A stretch of 53,910 nucleotides of DNA, filler included, from Sluysia triapertura (lineage: Eukaryota), in the NCBI GenBank assembly GCA_046118255.1. It is 4 parts of 4 records of this genome, joined end to end, with 100 filler letters (N's around TTAATTAATTAA, not from the genome) between each part and the next. Parts side by side here need not be neighbours in the genome. Positions count along the whole stretch, not along the records: positions 28,941 to 41,580 come from JBJNIA010092787.1; 3 more parts are not named here. One strand, written 5' to 3'. The notes below the pieces were generated by a model. The model worked only from the letters and a program-made list of their open reading frames with translations, ran no database searches and was not told where the DNA came from. The translations under genes and the position numbers were made by a program. Below are positions 28,947-41,297 of the stretch, one piece after another (position 1 is the first letter of the stretch; each line of letters starts with the position of its first letter).

Positions 28947-29006
<60 letters not shown>
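28947..29006. repeat. (ATT)n microsatellite
   Basis: Read directly. Confidence 0.95.
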
Positions 29007-31262
29007 CACTCATGAGGATTAAATCGTTTTAATATTATAAAATTTATAAGAGCACAACAATATATTACATTATAAATTATGCTTTATTTAATTTATTTAA
29101 TTATGATTTATTCAACATAATGGATACTTTAGAATTTTAGATTTAAAATGTACTTTTGATTGCAAAAATGTTATTTATATTGGTGAGAATATTCGAATTA
29201 GAGAAAAAGGTATTTTTTCGATCATTGTTTTTTATAAATACAAAATATGTAAAACTGTAAAAAAAACATAATTTACAATTAGTTTCAAGTGATTAACACA
29301 AGTGTGAATCATAATAATAATTATCATTTTGTCATTGACTACAAGTTTATTTGTAACTTGAATTTCACAATTATTGTGCCATTTTCAATTTTGCATAAAA
29401 GCATTCAATTTAAGCTACCGATGACTTAACATATTTTACACAAAATTATAACGTTAATGAATACATATTACATTTAAGTAAAAAAAATCATATAAAATCA
29501 CATTTAGGAAACATTTAACAGCAGTATACATGAAACAAACTTGGAATGTATTTAAACACCAAAAAAATTATATTCACTGATTTGAATAATAAAATTCAAC
29601 TATATTTTTATCTGATTCACTAAGTTTTTATTTAATACAATTTATTTTTTTATTCCAATCAGTGAATAAACAAATTTCATGCAGCTATCTTGTTTCTTTA
29701 AAAACAATTTACTCACCTTCATTAATTATCAAAAACAGAAAGTTAAAATGAAAAAATACTCAAAATTTAACTCTTCGTCTTAGACATCCATTCACAGATC
29801 GGGTATTAGGTAATATTCTTATCTTGTCGCTAAACAATTTTTATATTTATATTTCTAAATAGATTTAAAAAATTATGTAAACTATAAATCATCCTAAAAT
29901 GCTATTGAATAAGAACAATATCACTTGAAGTTCCAACTCCAATTCCCGTAGTTTTGCCAAAGTCGAGTGTGTAAACCAATGTTATCATGCAACAAAATAG
30001 GAGTCGATCTGTCGATAAATCTAGGTTGTTTTCTTTAAGTATTTGCATTATTTCGTCCATTTGGTTGCATGAAAACACAATGGATAGATCATAATGCGCT
30101 AGATCATTACAAACACTCATCACCAGCCTCTTTCGACAAATATTGTTCAGGTGATTTATCCTTGTCCAACCGATGTGCTGAAAGTTTTCGATTCATTTCT
30201 CATTGAAAGTGACAGTTCGATTCAAAGTCAATAAAGCAAGCTTCCAAACACTTTTGCTTGTTTTTCATTCAGTTCAGTTCATTTCAATTTTACCGATTTG
30301 AGCTTAATAAGTTAATAATGGCTGTTTACCGACTTCAACGATAGACACTCTGAGATAAGTCAGACTCATCAGTAACCATCGGTTCGTCATTTGAAGAATC
30401 CATTTGACAGAGACTGCGGCATAGTAAGATTAATGTCAAATACACTATTAACGTAAAGCGCGGTCTAGGATGCTGCAGTTCCATGTTATAATTCATACTT
30501 CATAATACTGCGAATTTCCGAACATCTTCAACAAAATTAAATTTTTAAAAGTTTTTAATATAATTTAGAAAGTTACAAACGAAATGTATAACTTTCCAAC
30601 AAAAACACACAACGGTAAAATATTAATAAGCTGTTAAAGTTGGCAATATAATTAATTACAAATTTCATCCTTACTAACCTAATAATTTATTCTATATACA
30701 AATTTTAATTAATATAATATTACATCATATATTGTCCAGAAATCCGCCTAAAATCATCCCTCAAAACTTTAACATATATTTAATTTAATTTCTATACATA
30801 TGATGTAAAAGCAGTTACATCGTAATTTTAAATCACAATGTTTATTAAATAAAAATTAATAATTAGTATTTGAATTTTAACTAAATTTTTCACTACATTG
30901 TGCTGCTAGTATAAAATTGCATCCAACTTCATCTGCAGTTTTTTTTCCAAAAACTGAGATTGTTTTCATAAATTAAACAAAATATTTTAGCTTTTAATCA
31001 TCCTAGCACTTCCCAAACTTTGAACAATATATAACAATATTTTAATTAATGTTTACATGTAACATTAAAACAGGTGTAATTTAAAGAGTAGAAAAAATTA
31101 TTTACATTAAAGTTTGGTACAGAAAGCATTTCAAAATTTTTCATCAGTTTTTTAGATGCTTCTAATAGTGCCGCTGGACATTTATATTGACGCAGAAAAA
31201 TTAGATATTTAGTTATAAATAGTCAGTAATTTAGACAATATTATGTATTAAATTTAAAATAC

Positions 31263-32390
31263 CTTTGTGGAACATTGCTAAACACTGTTGTAATATCTTG
31301 AATACTGGATTGATTTGGAGGTTGTTGTTGCTGTTGTGGAGAATGCTGTTGCGGTTGATGTTGTACATATTGTTGTGACAATTGCAGAGTCTTTTGCATA
31401 TTGACAGAAGACTGTGCCGTTAACGGTGAACTTAGCAAAGCTGATGAATTAAACTGTTGATGCTGCTGAGTAGCAAATGTAACTGGTGTTTGTGGAGATG
31501 ATTGTTGAGTAATTAATGATCGATTACGGAAAATTTGAGATTGTGGTTGTTGATGATGTGGTTGTTGTACAGAATGTGGGTTGTTTGTAGATAATGTCTG
31601 TGAATGTGGTGGTGAATGTAACTGATGATACTGATGTTGCTGTGATTGTTGTTGATGATGATACAATAAAGGATTGTGAGAAAACTGCGCGTAACTATTA
31701 GTGTTTGCAGCATTATTATTAGAATTTTGTGGTGCAGTTGTTTGTAACTTGGCACTATTATGAGCGGCATTACTTGTCAATTGAGTAATATAATCTATTG
31801 ATGATGCAGGTGTTGTAGAAGGGTATTTCCGCTTCTGAGATATTTCAGGAGACATGCTCATAACATGGTTGGATGTAGATATATTAGGTTTGATATCCAT
31901 ATTATTCGTATTTATTATCAATGGCTGAGTCGATTGAGGTAATAATTTAATAGTAGGTTGTTGTACTTGGGTCGGACCTTGTTGTACAAGTGGTGTTTGG
32001 GTATGTTGTGGATGTATAGCAGTTTCATTTTGAATTTTAATTCGTTTAGCAGCTGGTTCTTGCTTTATATTACAATTTGAAGGACTCATTAAAGGTGGTG
32101 GTAACTGTGGTTTAGTAATTATAGGAGTTGGCGATGAATTTGTAGTTACCATAGATGCAGTATTGGTTGTAAGAACAGGGCTAATTGATATAGGATTTTG
32201 ATTAGATGTAGGTGTAACAAGTGAAACAGATACCGATAATGGAGTGTTTTGTTGTGTATTAGTACAAATAGATGAAGCTTTGCGCTTCAGATTTGTAAAA
32301 GGAGACACATTGCTTTGATTTGTGTTTTGATGTTGAACAGGTGGTGTTGAAATTGGAGGTGGCATCTTGCATATATCTTTTCCAGTGGAT
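31263..32390 (-). CDS. Large exon encoding a Gln/Ser/Thr/Pro-rich low-complexity region, probably of a nuclear regulator
   Basis: 374-aa ORF with higher GC than its surroundings. ttttattag acceptor at 32391 and AG|gtattt donor at 31262 define a 1128-bp phase-symmetric exon. Contains an IKQE SUMO-like motif and KRK/KRIK basic patches. Confidence 0.7.
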
Positions 32391-33261
32391 CTAATAAAAG
32401 CAATTAATCAAATTGGTTAATAGAACATTACACAGTAAGTTAAGTTCAGTTGATTTATGTTACATAATAATGTCTTAAACTAAAAGTTAATCTTATCTTC
32501 TTGTTCATTGCATCTTTGAAGTTTATTTTATTCTTGTGGTTCCATCCTTCATATTATTCATATGCAAACACAAAATTTTATCTAACACATTAAAACATAA
32601 AAAGCATAGACCATTACCACATCCTCATCACCAAACTTTTAAAATAGTAAATTTATAAATTTAATAATTTTCAAATATTATTTTCATATAACCATTACTA
32701 AATTTTAACTTTTATAAAACATAACTCGCGATTGTCGTCACTATTATTCTTATCACCACCGACACCATTAGTCCGACAAAGAGCTTGAGGATAGCGAGAC
32801 TCAGTGGCTATGTATTTTAACAATAGATTTGCATGTCTATATTCTTTGTGTTACATTATAAACATCGTAATGAAAAAATCGGACCATTTAGATGTTTAAA
32901 ATGGATAAATTTTGCATGCATTTCAGATGGTGATAAAAGCAATCAGGAGTGTTCAAGCTGTCATCATGAGAGTCGAATAATGGACTCGGAACAGTAATAT
33001 AATTAGCGAATTTAAAATTGTATGTACCAGATATCTAAGTGATAATTCAACCATTTACCTAAAATTATGTCACCATACATATTATAACATAAATGTTACT
33101 CCACATACATACAAAACTTCATCTCGAACACATCAAAAAATACTCCATTTATACTATTAAATAACACCACATTAATTCCCACATATCCATTACGGTACTT
33201 TAATTTTTAAAGTAGCAAATATAACATTTTAAAATAATTTTAAACCATTCTTTTCATTTAA

Positions 33262-33492: not shown

Positions 33493-36159
33493 TTAATATT
33501 TAAAATTGTTTCAACAATATGAAGTTAAATACGTGATGAATGTGAAAATGTTTATTTCTTTTTTATCATTTGATCATTTAAAAATTCTTTTTAAAATTGT
33601 AACATTTAAAATAATATCGACTTGCAATAAAAGCCTAATATTATATAAAATTGTTTACACTGACAATTAATTTGAGGTCACGTGTGATTAGTCATCGCAT
33701 TTTTCTGCACTATTATCAGTTACTGTATTATTGCCAATCAATTTAAGATTTTCCTTTACATTTATCAAAATCATCTTTCATGTAAAATGTAAAAAGTCCT
33801 TAAAGGTCATGTAGATTTCAGAATATAATAATAATAATAATTATTATTAAAGCACATTTATATTTTCTTTATAAATAAATATAATAATAAATTTATTGTA
33901 ATATCTGCCGATAAATACCCTGAGAATTTTTATATACGAATTTAAATGATATTTTAATTATAAAATAAGTAATTTAAATAAAATATTAGCAAAATTATTA
34001 TTAGTTACTTTCTGATACTATATTATTTCACTAAAAATGAAAAGTTAACATGGTAAAACAACTATAATTCTACTTTACATATTTTATAATAATATAAATA
34101 AGATATGTACAGCTGGAAATTTATATTTATCTATTGTAACTAATTATTGCTATTTTTATTAATATTGTGATATCACGTTTTGGTCACAAACTAAATTCTA
34201 ATTTGTAATAGAAGTGACAGTAATAATAATAAAAATAATAGGATAATAATAATAAAAATAATAACAACAAATTAATTAAATTCTATAATATTTAAAAAAA
34301 TTGAGATAAATACGAAGTAATTACATATAGAAATTATTCATAAGACCTTTTAAGGTCAATTAACAATTATGCATGGAAACTATATCATTGATACAACCTT
34401 TTAAGGTCATAAAAAGAGGCGTTAATATTTCGAATTAGTTTGCTTATAATTAATTTGTTCATAATTATTTTGGTTGTTCGTTGAATTATTTGTTAATTAA
34501 TTGTTAGTTCTATTTCCATGGATAAAAAGTTCTTGAGTCAAATATTCTAGCTTAACACAATTTGAATTCAATAATTACACGTTAGATTTTAATATATGAG
34601 GTTCTCATATGCCTAAGCGACATCAAAAATCCACGCAAAATCTTTTAAAATTATCTTAAGGGTTATTTTAAACTCACAAAGTCTTATTTAAATTTTAACT
34701 ACTTCAATTAAAGTTTAGAAACATTAATTTAGTAAGTTTTATTTTTTTATATAAAATTTTCATATATTTATTCTTTCTTCATAATTGAATTTGGTGAACT
34801 GTAGCTAATTTTTCTTTAATTAAATTGTAATTTATTTTAGTGATTTTAATTATCAGTGACTTTTGAAGGACTATTTTAAATAAGTCCATAAATTAAGGGT
34901 CTGACATATATTTTTAATTTGACGGATTATTTTAAATAAGTTCATGAAATATATTTGTAACTAAACATTTGAAACATTTCAATAAGCCTAAGAGAGTCTA
35001 AAGAGTTTGATTTGAATGTCTTGGTTCGAAATTCGTACTAATAACCAATTAAATTACATTAAGACAAAGACCTTCATAAACTTTGCTTGAAAACCCTTTA
35101 AAACTTTCAAACATTTATTTTTATAACATAGATAACAGTAACGATAATCAGTACTCATTATAAATTTATATTTTCAGTGTTATGTGAAGTAAGTGAAGCA
35201 CAAGACAAAAAATTTCACACAATTTTTATAGAAGTTATGTTGCTTTTTTGAGTTTAACCATCATCAGCTGAACACAGTGTTTGTAGACCATTTCTTACAT
35301 TTTTGTACATCTGTACATCCCCCGTTTGTATGTTCTAAAATGTCATTAAATATAACAACATATTTCTTTTACCTTTTCGTGATAATTATTAATGCAAAAG
35401 TTTTATTTAACAATATTTGATACATTAAAAAATATTAAATAATTTTATTACTTACATAAACTTATTTCTTAATTTATAAAGCATCACTTATATGTACAAT
35501 GGTATATGAAACTTTCATTCAATATTTAATGATTATTTTTTATTATTTTTTTTCCAATAATAATCAATGTCAATTGAAATTTATGTTGTATTTAAAAATT
35601 ATTAATTCATTGTTACCAATAGTTATTATATTAGTGTTATTAAAACAATAGGAACGTTGTGTTATTATTATCATTATATTATCATAATCATTATGATTAC
35701 AATCAATTTTTGTGTCAATAATATACCTTGTGCATTTAAATTTAAAAAAAATTTTAAAAAATGTTGCTTTTTATTCATTTTTTGTGTCACATTTATCTTT
35801 ACAGTCAATATAAGCAGAATTTGACATTTGACATTTGTGTTCAGTCTGTTTTGCACAACGATATCTTTATAAATATTATAAATTCATATTTATGTAGTGG
35901 AAGTTAATTCTGAATTGATTTTTCATGATAGAGATGGAAATGCAAATATTTTCGTCTCAACTCACAATACTAATAATGAATTAAATTCTTGACTCATTAA
36001 GGTATATTTTATAATGATAAAGACAGATGTGCATAAATATTTTGTACAATGAAACTAGATCACTCGTAATTAATTATTTTAATGTTGTACATTTTATTTT
36101 AATTAATTTAGTTTCATTTAGATGTTGTACGCTACTCTAATTTAGATTTTTTTCAAAAA

Positions 36160-36964: not shown

Positions 36965-37602
36965 TAAGGGGACCAGACGTCCCGATTTTTCACAATTTGT
37001 CCCGCAACGTTTTTCAAAAGTCCCGACTTTTAGAATTAAGTTAAATTTTATATTAATGAAAATCATTGTTTTGCGTTCTAAGAATCCTACGGGCTACGAT
37101 GACTAACATATTGCTTTTGCTACCCAGTTACATTGTATTTGTCTCTCAGATGGTACACTTCGTGTTCGTACTGCGTGCTAGCAAGCTAATTAAACAAATA
37201 AATATTACAAATCTGTTATTTACCATAGAAAATTAAGGTAAGTAATTTATTTATATATTTCATAAATATATAAATTTTCTTAAACTTAGCTTAACATACT
37301 TGTAGTCTTCATATTTTATATTGATGACAAAAAGTATATTACCGACCTTAACCTTAAAAGAAAATTTAGAAAGAAATATAAAATTTACGAATAAAAAATC
37401 TACTGAAACAAATTCACTCAAATAAAAAAAATGTCAAGGAATAAAAATATTATACATTTTTTTATATTTCTAAATTGTACTTATTTTAAAAATGAAAAAA
37501 TATTACGATATTATTTTTTGATTCTGTATGAAAATTTTTGTTGATACTTCCCCCTCCTTCAGAGTTGTCCCGCTTTGCCCATCTAAAAGTCTGATCACCT
37601 TA
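36965..37602. mobile_element. Non-autonomous hAT-like element
   Basis: TIRs TAAGGGGACCAGAC / GTCTGATCACCTTA (12/14 match) with subterminal GTCCCG repeats at both ends. TSD imperfect. Confidence 0.7.
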
Positions 37603-38188
37603 TATTTTACTGAAGCAAAAGTTAAACATAGGTTTGTCGACAGATTCAAGAAATAATAAGTGTCACCTTGATAATTTCTCTATAATTTTCAATTCGTTTC
37701 AATCTGACGGTCTTACATTAATCGTACGCAGATTAAATTATCAAACTTTTGTTCAAATGAATCATTGAAACTCTCTCAAACATAACACTACCGTTCAGTT
37801 ATTTATTTCTCATGCAAATACAATAATACTTCGAAAATATTCGTTCGTTATAAGTTATACAAGTAAGTATGAACTCTTAAGAAATACCTTATTTATATCA
37901 ATGCCCTGCAACAATATAAATAGTGTCCGATGTCTTCATTATCAAACAGTATAAGGTCACAATATTAACGACATTAGTATCATAAATAACAATAATACAA
38001 AAATGACAGAAGGACAACAGATAATTAATGATATATAAATGTAATAAAAATCTAATTTTATTTCAACTTTATTATCAATTTAGAAGCGTATTTACTCGAC
38101 AATTTTGTCCATCAAAAATTTATTTTTACCTCTGTAGTGTTGGGATACAAGTCTAAGGTACCATAGTGTAATTGAGTATTGTTAGACG

Positions 38189-38259
38189 GGGCTGATAGCT
38201 CATGGTAGACCATCGAACTGCGCATCTAGAGATCCCGGGTTCGATTCCCGGTCAGTCCA
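38189..38259 (+). tRNA. tRNA-like (Ala-derived, pseudo) module in the TRIM 5' LTR
   Basis: GGGCTGA/TCAGTCC acceptor stem with G3:U70; A box TAGCTCA-TGG; B box GGTTCGATTCC; then TTTT. Anticodon stem does not pair canonically. Confidence 0.75.
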
Positions 38260-38278
38260 TTTTATGAAGTCTAACATT

Positions 38279-38290
38279 TGGTGAGCCCAC
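38279..38290 (+). promoter_or_regulatory. Primer-binding site of the TRIM (possibly tRNA-Trp type)
   Basis: TGG begins 2 nt after the LTR-terminal CA. TGGTGAGCCCAC resembles the complement of tRNA-Trp 3' ends (TGGTGA(C/A)CCCGAC). Primer identity is tentative. Confidence 0.65.
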
Positions 38291-38433
38291 ATATCGAACA
38301 CCCTTCTGATGTCGAAATTAATGATTTATCAGATGTTTGAGGACAAACATAATGGAATTGGGTGAGATATGTTGGGATAAAGGCCTAAGATGCATAGTAT
38401 AATTGAGTATAATAATCTAAAAATTGTTAGACG

Positions 38434-38505
38434 TGGCTGGTAGCTCAGTGGTAGAGCATCAAACTGCGCAGCGAGAGGTCCCGGGTTCGATCCCCGGTCA
38501 GTCCA
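38434..38505 (+). tRNA. tRNA-like (Ala-derived, pseudo) module in the TRIM 3' LTR
   Basis: D arm TAGCTCAGTGGTAGAGC; T arm CCGGGTTCGATCCCCGG; ends TCAGTCCA. CGCAGCGAGAGGT resembles the tRNA-Ala anticodon and variable region. Confidence 0.75.
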
Positions 38506-39481
38506 TTTATGAAGTCTAACAGTAGGTTCAAATCAACACACTGTGATTTATAGCTTATTTTAATTTTGTTGTGTTCTACTTACAAATGATTGACAAATTT
38601 GTTCACATGTTGAAAAGAAATGAAACACAAAATGCACACCATATTGACTTAACAATATTGACTAAACACACTTGATATATTCTTCACACCAAGTGGTGTA
38701 CCTAAAATTCCAAAATTCCCAAATAAAAATCAATAATTAAATTGCATTTGCGCAAGCATAGAATCTTCCTTGAAATTATACTAATGCTTCAATATACTTA
38801 TAAAATAGCATTTTGAGTTGCACTTTAATGAAAAATATCCTTTTTATAGTATTTTTTTTGAATGTTATTCTATCTTATCCTTTTCTATGTTTAATTCTAT
38901 TATTACAGACAACAATCTCAATCTTAATTTATTGTTAAAATATTATTAAAATTTTACTCACTTTGTCTTAATTTTCAATACTGTCTTATATGGAAACTTA
39001 AAAAAGTTGTAATGATCTCAAAACCTTCAATCGGATTATAATCTTAACTTCAATTGTATATTATATTGAATACTTTTAACTACTCTGTTGTTCGATAGAG
39101 ATGAAAGTACAATTTACGAATATTACGAATATTTTTGCTTTCTCATTTTGCCCATCAGTGCAACAAATAAATTAATTTTTAAACTATATTCACTTAAAGT
39201 TTTACTTAAACGATACAGCAATTGTAGTTTTATGTAAACTTCTAACAAAGGAATTTTTTAATTATTAATTGATGAAAAATTAACTTTGACGGTAATACTC
39301 GCCGGTTAAAATATTTAACAATATTTAACACCTTTTAACATTTCAATTTGAAGTTATTTTTTAAGTTTAGCCATTTTTTCTCAATTCATGTTTTGACTTT
39401 TCGCAAAATAATTGTTAAATTTATTTAGAGGTATAATTTTCTTTTAGCTCATTTTGAATCTAAATATACACATTTTGGTCG

Positions 39482-40287: not shown

Positions 40288-40940
40288 GTCGAAATTGGTA
40301 TACACAAAATTGTGGTAGAAATAGTGTTAATGTTCAGTCGATATTCTATCAGAATCCAAAGGTAATATTCAGTCGTTAAAATATTTAATATTTATTATTA
40401 ATATTCTACCAAATTTTGACATTTATTGGTCGCATAGCGTCTTCATTAGAAGCAACTTCTCTTTAATTCAATATTTTACTTTAATTTTATAATAATTTAT
40501 ATGCGTTGGTGTTACACTGTAGCTGTATAGCCATTTATCTCTACATAATAGTTAATTATAATATATAATATTGTTTTATTTTGTATTTTCTCTATATTTT
40601 AATTGATTATAATTCATTTTATAATTCTAACGATACACTTTATTCATCTTGTTAGTTGGTACTTGTTAGTGTTTGTTAGTATTCATTTCTAGAGGTGTTT
40701 CCATGTTTTATTGGTAATTTTAATACTTTTGGATTCTTTCATTTCCTTTTATTGCTTGTTTTATTTTATCTTGGTTTTTCTCAGTGTTTTTTGGTATTAT
40801 TAAGTTTGAAATTACAAAGAAAGTACCGCACCATCTTCGTTAAACTTTTGTTATATTTATTTGTATAATTTTATTTTAAAACCTTTAAGGATGTTCACAA
40901 GTTTATCATCTTGTTTCCACAAGAATTGCTATTAAACAAT

Positions 40941-41097
40941 TGTTAGACTTCGTAAAATGGACTGACCGGGATCGAACCCGGGACCATCGTCTGCGCAGTC
41001 GATGCTCTACCACTGAGCTATCAGCCCCGCCTAACAATTTCAGATTTATTATATTCCATTATACTACTTGGCACTTTTTAGGCCTTTTACCCCAACA
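40941..41097 (-). mobile_element. Solo LTR of the tRNA-bearing TRIM family (minus strand)
   Basis: Reverse complement reads TGTTGGGG...GAAGTCTAACA. CAAT duplicated at 40937-40940 and 41098-41101. Confidence 0.9.
40958..41027 (-). tRNA. tRNA-like pseudo module inside the solo LTR
   Basis: Reverse complement GGGCTGATAGCTCAGTGGTAGAGCATCGACTGCGCAGACGATGGTCCCGGGTTCGATCCCGGTCAGTCCA, then TTTT. Confidence 0.75.
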
Positions 41098-41297
41098 CAA
41101 TGTTTAAATTTAATTCAAGTCGATCTTATGTCTCATTTTATAAGTCAAATTACTGAAAATATTTAAATTCAAATTAAAATAGTTTATAATTTTATTCTAT
41201 ATAAATCGTGAAGATTAGTTGACAGAGGTGGAAGTTCAAAATTACTTAAATTACCAAAGTATACTTATTAAAATACAAAATTTAATTTCCGTTTGAT

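What the first reader, a model, noticed from the sequence alone, without database searches (positions are those of the whole stretch)
38134..38525. 384-bp LTR retrotransposon whose LTRs are built around a tRNA gene
Seen: two ~140-150 bp TG...CA direct repeats, each holding a full-length tRNA-like sequence with A and B boxes. Between them is a 93-bp interior that starts with a TGG PBS and ends in a purine tract. A 4-bp TSD (GTAG) flanks the element. Established: this is TRIM architecture; Cassandra TRIMs carry 5S RNA in their LTRs, and as I recall the Helenus TRIMs carry tRNA-like sequence and make 4-bp TSDs in animals. Inference: a Pol III-driven, protein-free retroelement moved by an autonomous Gypsy-type element. 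It is easily mis-annotated as two tRNA genes or SINEs. Likely a new family or host lineage for a rarely reported class.
Basis: partly seen in the sequence, partly recalled or inferred. Interest (0 to 1): 0.9.

Follow-up and report, generated by a model that had tools for sequence, protein, structure and literature searches.

The report
tRNA-bearing miniature LTR retrotransposon (Helenus-type)
This is a real but old, dead copy of a 384-bp protein-free LTR retrotransposon with a tRNA-derived sequence in each LTR; it belongs to the 'Helenus' TRIM class described in 2024, so it is probably a new family of a known and still rarely reported kind.

Summary
The element spans 38138-38521. It has two TG..CA LTRs of 139 and 152 nt, 89.8% identical, and a 93-nt interior. 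The interior starts TT+TGG (PBS TGGTGAGCCCAC) and ends in the purine-rich GGGTGAGATA. The flanks are GTAG/GTAG. Each LTR holds a tRNA-like sequence above Rfam's tRNA threshold, with A and B boxes.

It is a solo LTR (40941-41097, minus strand) with the same TGTTGGG..TCTAACA ends and its own 4-bp duplication, ATTG/ATTG.

In a public run that holds this locus, 13,596 contigs lie on the element. Hundreds of them end exactly at the LTR's last base. Others cross LTR-interior-LTR. A second, differently coded organism carries the same arrangement.

These results reject SINEs, tRNA gene pairs and tandem duplication. The element meets every structural criterion of Helenus (Kojima 2024; animal type, 4-bp TSD). 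Its termini and PBS match none of the published consensus sequences.

Three points are untested: Pol III drive, the autonomous partner and the primer tRNA. The host could not be named, so the 'new host lineage' claim stays open. Verdict: a correct reading and a new member of a known kind, of modest interest.

The parts
38134..38137 (+). Left target-site duplication, GTAG
   Evidence: Identical to 38522-38525
38138..38276 (+). 5' LTR, 139 nt, TGTTGGG...TCTAACA. It lacks 14 nt that are present in the 3' LTR and in the solo LTR
   Evidence: Alignments; blastn. In one search, 367+128 contigs of run X1 run into unrelated sequence just behind 38276/38277
38189..38259 (+). tRNA-derived sequence in the 5' LTR. 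A box 38196-38205 (one G lost); B box 38238-38248
   Evidence: Rfam RF00005 at 35.9 bits; ARAGORN; motif check
38260..38263 (+). TTTT directly behind the tRNA-like part. It is the only T4 run in the element and a candidate leaky Pol III terminator
   Evidence: The same T4 is in the solo LTR at 40954-40957; the 3' LTR has TTT
38277..38369 (+). 93-nt interior with no coding capacity
   Evidence: It recurs in other copies: X1 contigs 3-6 and X2 contig 11 cross LTR-interior-LTR
38279..38290 (+). Primer-binding site TGGTGAGCCCAC, 2 nt behind the 5' LTR
   Evidence: No variant was reported at 38266-38298 among family contigs. It matches 11 of 12 bases of the tRNA-Trp-type PBS derived from the A. mellifera tRNA printed in Kojima Fig. 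S2
38354..38369 (+). Purine-rich tract GGAATTGGGTGAGATA abutting the 3' LTR (PPT-like; core GGGTGAGATA)
   Evidence: 12 of 16 and 8 of 10 purines
38370..38521 (+). 3' LTR, 152 nt, TGTTGGG...TCTAACA
38434..38505 (+). tRNA-derived sequence in the 3' LTR. A box 38441-38451; B box 38484-38494
   Evidence: Rfam RF00005 at 36.7 bits
38522..38525 (+). Right target-site duplication, GTAG
40941..41097 (-). Solo LTR of the same family, 157 nt, TGTTGGGG...TCTAACA. Its tRNA-like part is 40958-41027
   Evidence: Rfam tRNA at 51.5 bits; 84.5% identical to the 3' LTR
41098..41101 (-). Upstream TSD of the solo LTR, ATTG (read on the minus strand)
40937..40940 (-). Downstream TSD of the solo LTR, ATTG (read on the minus strand)

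Best explanation
The element is an old, decayed insertion of a Helenus-type TRIM (class 'TRIMp3'). This is a 384-bp non-autonomous LTR retrotransposon that encodes nothing, and each of its LTRs is built around a tRNA-derived sequence.

Shown:
- Its anatomy is TSD, LTR, PBS, short interior, purine tract, LTR, TSD.
- It belongs to a highly repeated family with fixed TG..CA boundaries.
- The family leaves solo LTRs by LTR-LTR recombination.
- It makes 4-bp target duplications.

Inferred:
- It is copied by the reverse transcriptase and integrase of an autonomous LTR element. By analogy with other animal Helenus, this partner would be a Gypsy-type element that makes 4-bp duplications. The partner primes on a host tRNA that pairs with TGGTGAGCCCAC.
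- The genomic RNA is most likely made by RNA polymerase III from the internal A and B boxes of the tRNA-like part of the 5' LTR.
- In that model U3 is the variable first 51-64 nt of the LTR, R is the tRNA-like part, and U5 is the last 13 nt.
- The TTTT directly behind the tRNA-like part would then have to be read through in the 5' LTR and used in the 3' LTR, that is, act as a leaky terminator.

This copy has about 11% LTR-LTR divergence, a damaged A box in the 5' LTR and a broken acceptor stem in the 3' LTR. It is no longer functional.
For: Anatomy and coordinates.

Three LTR copies in the piece share both ends while their neighbouring sequences are unrelated.

The solo LTR carries its own ATTG/ATTG duplication.

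The paired LTRs are closer to each other (89.8%) than either is to the solo LTR (82%). That is expected for one insertion.

In run X1, 13,596 contigs lie on the element at 80% identity or more. Summed depth is 1e5-9e5 inside the element against about 12 in the flanks. Contigs run into unrelated sequence just behind 38276/38277 (367+128 contigs). Loose ends at 38508 continue with the sequence TATGAAGTCTAACA and then diverge. Contigs from other copies cross LTR-interior-LTR. Run X2, from another organism, shows the same arrangement at about 90% identity.

Between elements the tRNA-like part (88-89%) and the 16-nt tail (94-100%) are better kept than the first part of the LTR (71-72%). The B box is intact in all three copies, and the A box in two; the 5' LTR has lost one G. 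This fits selection on the promoter.

The definition and properties of Helenus come from PMC10886601. [quoted passage not shown]
Against: - There is no RNA evidence at all. No RNA run holds the locus, so the polymerase and the transcript ends are unknown.
- A T4 run 13 nt before the end of the 5' LTR should stop part of any Pol III transcription.
- The absence of other T4 runs in the element is not significant (P about 0.4-0.5 by shuffling).
- The first part of the LTR holds TATAAT-like motifs, so a Pol II start is not excluded.
- No autonomous partner is in the piece.
- The PBS matches none of the PBS types listed for published Helenus, and I could not identify its tRNA.
- The purine tract is short and interrupted.
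- The tRNA-like parts do not fold better than shuffled sequence in two of three copies.
Confidence: 0.88

Rival explanations
1. It is the same TRIM, but RNA polymerase II transcribes it from the AT-rich first part of the LTR. The tRNA-like part would be a passenger, the remnant of a tRNA-derived SINE that once landed in an LTR, kept for RNA structure or packaging rather than as a promoter.
For: TATAAT-like motifs lie about 30-40 nt upstream of the tRNA-like start in the 3' LTR and the solo LTR. The T4 directly behind the tRNA-like part would end a Pol III transcript after about 75 nt. Kojima proposes a SINE insertion into an LTR as the origin of the class and states that Pol III function is unproven for Helenus.
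Against: The tRNA-like part is clearly better conserved between elements than the supposed Pol II promoter region: 88-89% against 71-72%. In one search the first part of the 5' LTR also has far lower family depth. The B box is intact in all three copies and the A box in two. Cassandra, the analogous class, is reported to be transcribed from its Pol III promoter.
Confidence: 0.25
2. There is no LTR element here. Either two independent insertions of a tRNA-derived SINE lie 93 nt apart, or a local tandem duplication contains a tRNA pseudogene.
For: Each repeat holds a tRNA-like head with A and B boxes, as SINE2 elements do.
Against: - There are no A- or T-rich or simple-repeat tails. All three copies end at the same TCTAACA and start at the same TGTTGGG.
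- The duplications are 4 bp and flank the pair as a whole, not each repeat.
- TGG lies 2 nt behind the first repeat and a purine tract lies before the second.
- The same 93-nt interior sits between repeats in many other copies and in a second organism.
Confidence: 0.03
3. The repeats are genuine tRNA genes or tRNA pseudogenes in a small cluster.
For: The Rfam tRNA scores exceed the gathering threshold.
Against: The anticodon arm is abnormal. ARAGORN reports a 4-base 'anticodon' and no isotype, and it misses one copy. Thousands of contigs carry the same sequence together with about 50-65 nt of shared upstream LTR and a shared 13-16-nt tail. Two of three copies fold no better than shuffles.
Confidence: 0.01

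Closest known systems
Helenus TRIMs of animals (Kojima 2024, PMC10886601), especially the bivalve families such as Helenus-2_CGi (LTR 139, interior 101, 4-bp TSD)
   Same: - Total size, LTR size and interior size all lie inside the published ranges.
- A tRNA-like sequence with A and B boxes sits in the LTR, followed by a T-run near the LTR end.
- The PBS starts 0-3 nt behind the LTR with TGG.
- The interior ends G-rich.
- The TSD is 4 bp.
- Solo LTRs occur.
- The tRNA-like part is not a plausible functional tRNA.
- The T-arm region resembles that of Helenus-2_CGi by eye.
   Different: - None of the animal consensus sequences has the LTR start TGTTGGGAT or TGTTGGGG; only two or three fungal Cronartium families do.
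- The PBS TGGTGAGC and the tRNA-like 3' end CGGTCAGTC are absent from all published sequences.
- The PBS is not one of the listed primer types Lys, His, Leu, Trp, Arg, Ile, Pro, Glu or Ser.
- The element sits in very AT-rich DNA (20-32% GC), whereas the element itself is 43% GC.
- The host is unknown.
Cassandra TRIMs of plants (5S rRNA-derived sequence in the LTRs)
   Same: It is a protein-free TRIM whose LTRs carry a small-RNA gene with an internal Pol III promoter and terminator. It has a PBS and a PPT.
   Different: Cassandra carries 5S instead of tRNA and occurs in plants. Its PBS is TGGTATCAGAGC. Its 5-bp TSD is stated from my own knowledge of plant LTR elements.
tRNA-derived SINEs (SINE2)
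   Same: A tRNA-derived head with A and B boxes; short; non-coding; highly repeated.
   Different: SINEs are copied by LINE machinery. They end in A-rich or simple-repeat tails with longer, variable duplications, and they have no LTRs, PBS or PPT. This element shows none of the SINE end features.

Membership tests
Helenus (TRIM with tRNA-derived sequence in its LTRs; TRIMp3) | Two direct long terminal repeats with TG..CA ends around a short non-coding interior; total length within the TRIM range (published Helenus 311-1263 bp) | tested here: met
   139- and 152-nt LTRs, TGTTGGG..TCTAACA, 93-nt interior, 384 bp in all; published range
Helenus (TRIM with tRNA-derived sequence in its LTRs; TRIMp3) | tRNA-derived sequence in each LTR with conserved box A (TRGCY..YGG) and box B (GGTTC) | tested here: met
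   Rfam tRNA at 35.9, 36.7 and 51.5 bits in the three LTRs. TAGCTCAGTGG and GGTTCGATYCC are present; the A box of the 5' LTR has lost one G
Helenus (TRIM with tRNA-derived sequence in its LTRs; TRIMp3) | Primer-binding site just behind the 5' LTR, complementary to a host tRNA | tested here: inconclusive
   TGG starts 2 nt behind the LTR, and TGGTGAGCCCAC is invariant among family contigs. No host tRNA set was available. The nearest printed tRNA 3' end is A. mellifera tRNA-Trp, matching 11 of 12
Helenus (TRIM with tRNA-derived sequence in its LTRs; TRIMp3) | Polypurine tract just before the 3' LTR | tested here: met
   GGGTGAGATA, 8 of 10 purines, abuts the 3' LTR. It is weak but resembles the ...GGGGGGTGAG end of the fish Helenus interiors
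Helenus (TRIM with tRNA-derived sequence in its LTRs; TRIMp3) | Target-site duplication of fixed length (4 bp in animals, 5 bp in fungi and plants) | tested here: met
   GTAG/GTAG around the full element and ATTG/ATTG around the solo LTR; joint chance about 8e-5
Helenus (TRIM with tRNA-derived sequence in its LTRs; TRIMp3) | Interspersed multicopy family, with solo LTRs and with the interior recurring between LTRs | tested here: met
   Solo LTR at 40941-41097. 13,596 contigs of run X1 lie on the element, some crossing LTR-interior-LTR; a second organism shows the same arrangement
Helenus (TRIM with tRNA-derived sequence in its LTRs; TRIMp3) | Transcription by RNA polymerase III from the tRNA-type promoter (expected, but not demonstrated for any Helenus) | not testable with these tools
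   No RNA run holds the locus. Kojima states that this is unvalidated for Helenus
Any one of the published Helenus families (sequence-level membership) | Shared LTR termini, PBS or interior with a published consensus (DataS1 of PMC10886601) | tested here: not met
   Exact-word look-ups in the supplementary FASTA. The PBS word, the tRNA-like 3' end and the LTR end were not found in a comparable position. The LTR-start word occurs only in fungal Cronartium families, which have a different PBS and a 5-bp TSD. This is an exact-word test, not an alignment, so distant kinship is not excluded
tRNA-derived SINE (SINE2) | 3' tail of A-rich or simple repeats, variable and longer duplications, no terminal repeats | tested here: not met
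   All copies end at TCTAACA with 4-bp duplications

The most novel reading that the evidence does not exclude
The host may be an animal lineage outside the groups in which Helenus has been reported: chalcidoid and cynipid wasps, pteriomorph bivalves, Lingula, lineid nemerteans, Mnemiopsis, coelacanth, sturgeon/paddlefish and ostariophysan fishes. The family may also be far more abundant there than any described Helenus. Summed contig depth inside the element is 1e4-1e5 times the single-copy flank in run X1, although the tool warns that this figure is not a copy number. The primer tRNA may be of a type not yet seen in the class. Together these would give a natural system in which a Pol III-type promoter and a leaky T4 terminator inside an LTR can be tested.
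Probability: 0.3. Interest if true: 0.5.

Novelty: new member of a known kind. Interest (0 to 1): 0.3.

Why it matters
Helenus-type elements are easily annotated as tRNA genes, tRNA pseudogenes or SINEs. Here Rfam and ARAGORN both call them tRNAs, so recognising the family cleans up tRNA and repeat annotation for this genome.

The class rests on a single 2024 paper. Each further family, above all a very abundant one shared by two species, widens the base for two open questions: whether Pol III really drives an LTR retrotransposon, and how such an element pairs with an autonomous partner.

For this locus there is no sign of any effect on a gene. The copy is old and inert.

Tried and rejected
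- **Naming the host failed.** The runs are coded. The only convincing coding exon in the piece is a Q-rich 374-aa ORF at 31241-32365, minus strand. It has no hit in the word-indexed search, none in the exhaustive HMMER search of 1.8 billion representatives, no Pfam family, only weak language-model neighbours, and no recorded gene. Ten further open frames gave no Pfam family.
- **Collection scans found nothing.** Exact-pattern scans for the LTR end and for the tRNA-like anticodon region found nothing in viral contigs, metagenome contigs (two scans) or prokaryotic genome contigs. I therefore could not fetch further copies as loci or make a copy-by-copy TSD census. Evidence from other copies is limited to the aggregated tables.
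- **T4 depletion as a Pol III signature is not significant.**
- **Self-priming was rejected.** The PBS is not complementary to the element's own tRNA-like 3' end, by eye, as Kojima also found for the class.
- **The bacterial promoter and terminator scan is irrelevant to a eukaryotic element.**
- **Joints are not evidence for tandem arrays.** The 'goes back 245' and 'skips about 250-280' joints link equivalent positions of the two LTRs.

Full report
**1. What is there**

Reading 37800-38900 and checking each coordinate by script gives the following layout.

| Feature | Coordinates | Notes |
|---|---|---|
| Left TSD | 38134-38137 | GTAG |
| 5' LTR | 38138-38276 | 139 nt, TGTTGGG...TCTAACA |
| Interior | 38277-38369 | 93 nt |
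| 3' LTR | 38370-38521 | 152 nt, same ends |
| Right TSD | 38522-38525 | GTAG |

- The interior begins TT and then TGGTGAGCCCAC. It ends GGAATTGGGTGAGATA.
- The repeat finder and MAFFT confirm the two repeats. They are 89.8% identical over aligned bases (K2P 0.111). The 5' LTR lacks 14 nt that the 3' LTR has.
- Rfam's tRNA model matches 38189-38259 (35.9 bits) and 38434-38505 (36.7 bits); the gathering score is 29.
- ARAGORN finds only the first of these, with a 4-base 'anticodon' and no isotype.
- The A box (TAGCTCAGTGG, one G lost in the 5' LTR) and the B box (GGTTCGATYCC) are present in both LTRs.

The only softening is that the 'purine tract' is short and interrupted.

**2.

Rfam's best tRNA hit in the piece (51.5 bits) is at 40958-41027 on the minus strand. 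Reading that strand shows a complete single LTR at 40941-41097.

- It starts TGTTGGGG and ends TCTAACA.
- It is flanked by ATTG on both sides (41098-41101 and 40937-40940).
- It is 84.5% identical to the 3' LTR over its full length.

A solo LTR with its own 4-bp duplication is what LTR-LTR recombination leaves behind. A SINE or a tRNA gene would not produce it.

In the three-way alignment both LTR boundaries are the same in all three copies, while the sequences outside them are unrelated. A 4-bp flank match has a probability of about 0.009 in this base composition, and two independent ones about 8e-5. No further copy or fragment lies in the 12.6-kb piece.

**3. Evidence from outside the window**

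One public run (X1, organism coded) holds 85% of the sampled words of 37600-39100. A second run (X2, another coded organism) holds 11%. Both were kept as contigs and were laid on the stretch at 80% identity or more.

- *Copy load.* The single-copy flanks have depth about 12. Inside the element, 13,596 contigs of X1 align, and summed depth reaches 1e5-9e5. The tool warns that this is not a copy number. I take it only as 'highly repeated, thousands of copies or more'.
- *Fixed 3' boundary.* 367 and 128 contigs run into unrelated AT-rich sequence just behind 38276 and 38277, that is, at the last base of the LTR. Contigs whose alignment breaks at 38508 continue with the sequence TATGAAGTCTAACA and only then diverge. 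These results fix the 3' boundary across the family.
- *The interior recurs.* Contigs from other copies (records 3-6, with 16-31 differences) cross from the 5' LTR through the interior into the 3' LTR. Interior depth is of the same order as the depth of the tRNA-like part.
- *A second organism.* In X2, a contig of depth 209 covers 38181-38381 at about 90% identity. It then continues with the LTR-start variant seen in my solo LTR. Another X2 contig ends ...TACGAAGTCTAACA followed by unrelated sequence. The family, with the same architecture, therefore exists in a second organism.
- *Variable and fixed parts.* The first part of the 5' LTR (38138-38211) has much lower depth than the rest, so that part varies among subfamilies. 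No variant is reported at 38266-38298, so the LTR tail and the PBS are fixed.

**4. State of this copy**

The two LTRs are closer to each other (89.8%) than either is to the solo LTR (about 82%). That is expected for one insertion event.

Comparison with the family majority shows private changes in each LTR.

- 5' LTR: for example 38210, 38225, 38232 and 38246, plus the lost G behind 38202.
- 3' LTR: 38434, 38440 and 38461.

About 11% divergence means an old insertion. With neutral rates of 1-5e-9 per site per year this is roughly 10-55 million years. The rate is assumed, because the host is unknown. The copy is inert.

**5. How it most likely works**

*Shown.* The anatomy is that of a protein-free LTR retroelement that integrates with a 4-bp staggered cut.

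*Inferred from established LTR retrotransposon biology.*
- A host tRNA pairs with the PBS and primes minus-strand synthesis.
- The purine tract primes the plus strand.
- Reverse transcriptase, integrase and capsid come from an autonomous element.

*Transcription.* Between elements the tRNA-like part (88-89% identity) and the 13-16-nt tail (94-100%) are much better kept than the first 51-64 nt of the LTR (71-72%). The B box is intact in all three copies and the A box in two. This fits the view of Kojima, and of the Cassandra work, that the small-RNA module is kept as an internal Pol III promoter.

If so, U3 is the variable first part, R is the tRNA-like part and U5 is the short tail. The TTTT directly behind the tRNA-like part (38260-38263) is also present in the solo LTR, and it is the only T4 run in the element. 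It would have to be read through in the 5' LTR and used in the 3' LTR. That is a leaky-terminator requirement, like the poly(A)-signal problem of retroviruses.

This transcription model is my inference and nothing here tests it.
- No RNA run was available.
- The lack of other T4 runs is not significant.
- TATAAT-like motifs upstream leave room for Pol II.
- Two of the three tRNA-like parts fold no better than shuffles, and the anticodon arm is abnormal. A functional tRNA product is therefore unlikely.
- From memory only, the tRNA-like part looks closest to animal tRNA-Cys(GCA) with two extra bases in the anticodon loop. I could not test this.

**6. Comparison with what is known**

Kojima (2024, PMC10886601) defined Helenus as TRIMs with a tRNA-derived sequence in the LTRs.
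- They have a PBS and a PPT.
- Fungal and plant families make 5-bp TSDs; animal families make 4-bp TSDs.
- The PBS of animal families resembles that of Gypsy elements.
- Solo LTRs are common, and the tRNA-like parts are mostly non-functional.

Published sizes are LTRs of 104-323 bp, interiors of 43-621 bp and totals of 311-1263 bp. The present element falls in the middle of the bivalve range.

Every structural criterion is met (see the membership table). The identity of the primer tRNA is inconclusive, and Pol III drive is untestable here.

At the sequence level it is not one of the published families.
- Exact-word look-ups in the paper's FASTA supplement found no family with its PBS word or its tRNA-like 3' end.
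- Its LTR-end word occurs only once, in a non-comparable position.
- Its LTR-start word occurs only in fungal Cronartium families, which have a different PBS and 5-bp TSDs.
- Its PBS is none of the types in Fig. S2. The nearest is the tRNA-Trp type, matching 11 of 12 against the A. mellifera tRNA printed there.

The literature held here contains no later paper that extends the host range of Helenus.

**7. Host**

I could not name the host.
- The DNA is very AT-rich, 20-32% GC in 1-kb windows.
- The single convincing exon has no detectable relative.
- No collection that I can scan holds the family.

The 4-bp TSD points to an animal host by Kojima's rule. That is a correlation from one paper, not a test. 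Whether this is a new host lineage therefore stays open.

**8. Verdict**

The element is a new member, probably a new family, of a known and recently described kind. Interest is modest. It matters for correct tRNA and repeat annotation, and as one more abundant example for testing Pol III-driven LTR retrotransposition.

Noticed in passing
window 31244-32407 (-), ATG ORF 31241-32365: A 388-codon open frame in 25-32% GC DNA. It is rich in Q, S, T and P and has KRK-type motifs, so it is almost certainly a coding exon. It has no relative in two very large protein searches and no Pfam family.
   Followed up: partly
window 38569-38721: The sequence just downstream of the TRIM has summed contig depth of 400-1200 in run X1, against about 12 for single-copy flank. 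It is therefore another, unidentified repeat. It holds a 14-nt tandem pair (38641-38668) and an 11-bp-stem hairpin (38669-38695).
   Followed up: no
window 28947-29006: A perfect (TAT)20 microsatellite lies at the edge of the piece. AT-rich low-complexity tracts also occur at 33822-33861 and 34221-34280.
   Followed up: no
window 38138-38211 versus 38370-38433: The first part of the 3' LTR is much closer to the bulk of the family than the same part of the 5' LTR. Depth is about 1e5 against about 1e3, and the 5' LTR has a 14-nt deletion. The decay of the two LTRs has therefore been uneven.
   Followed up: partly
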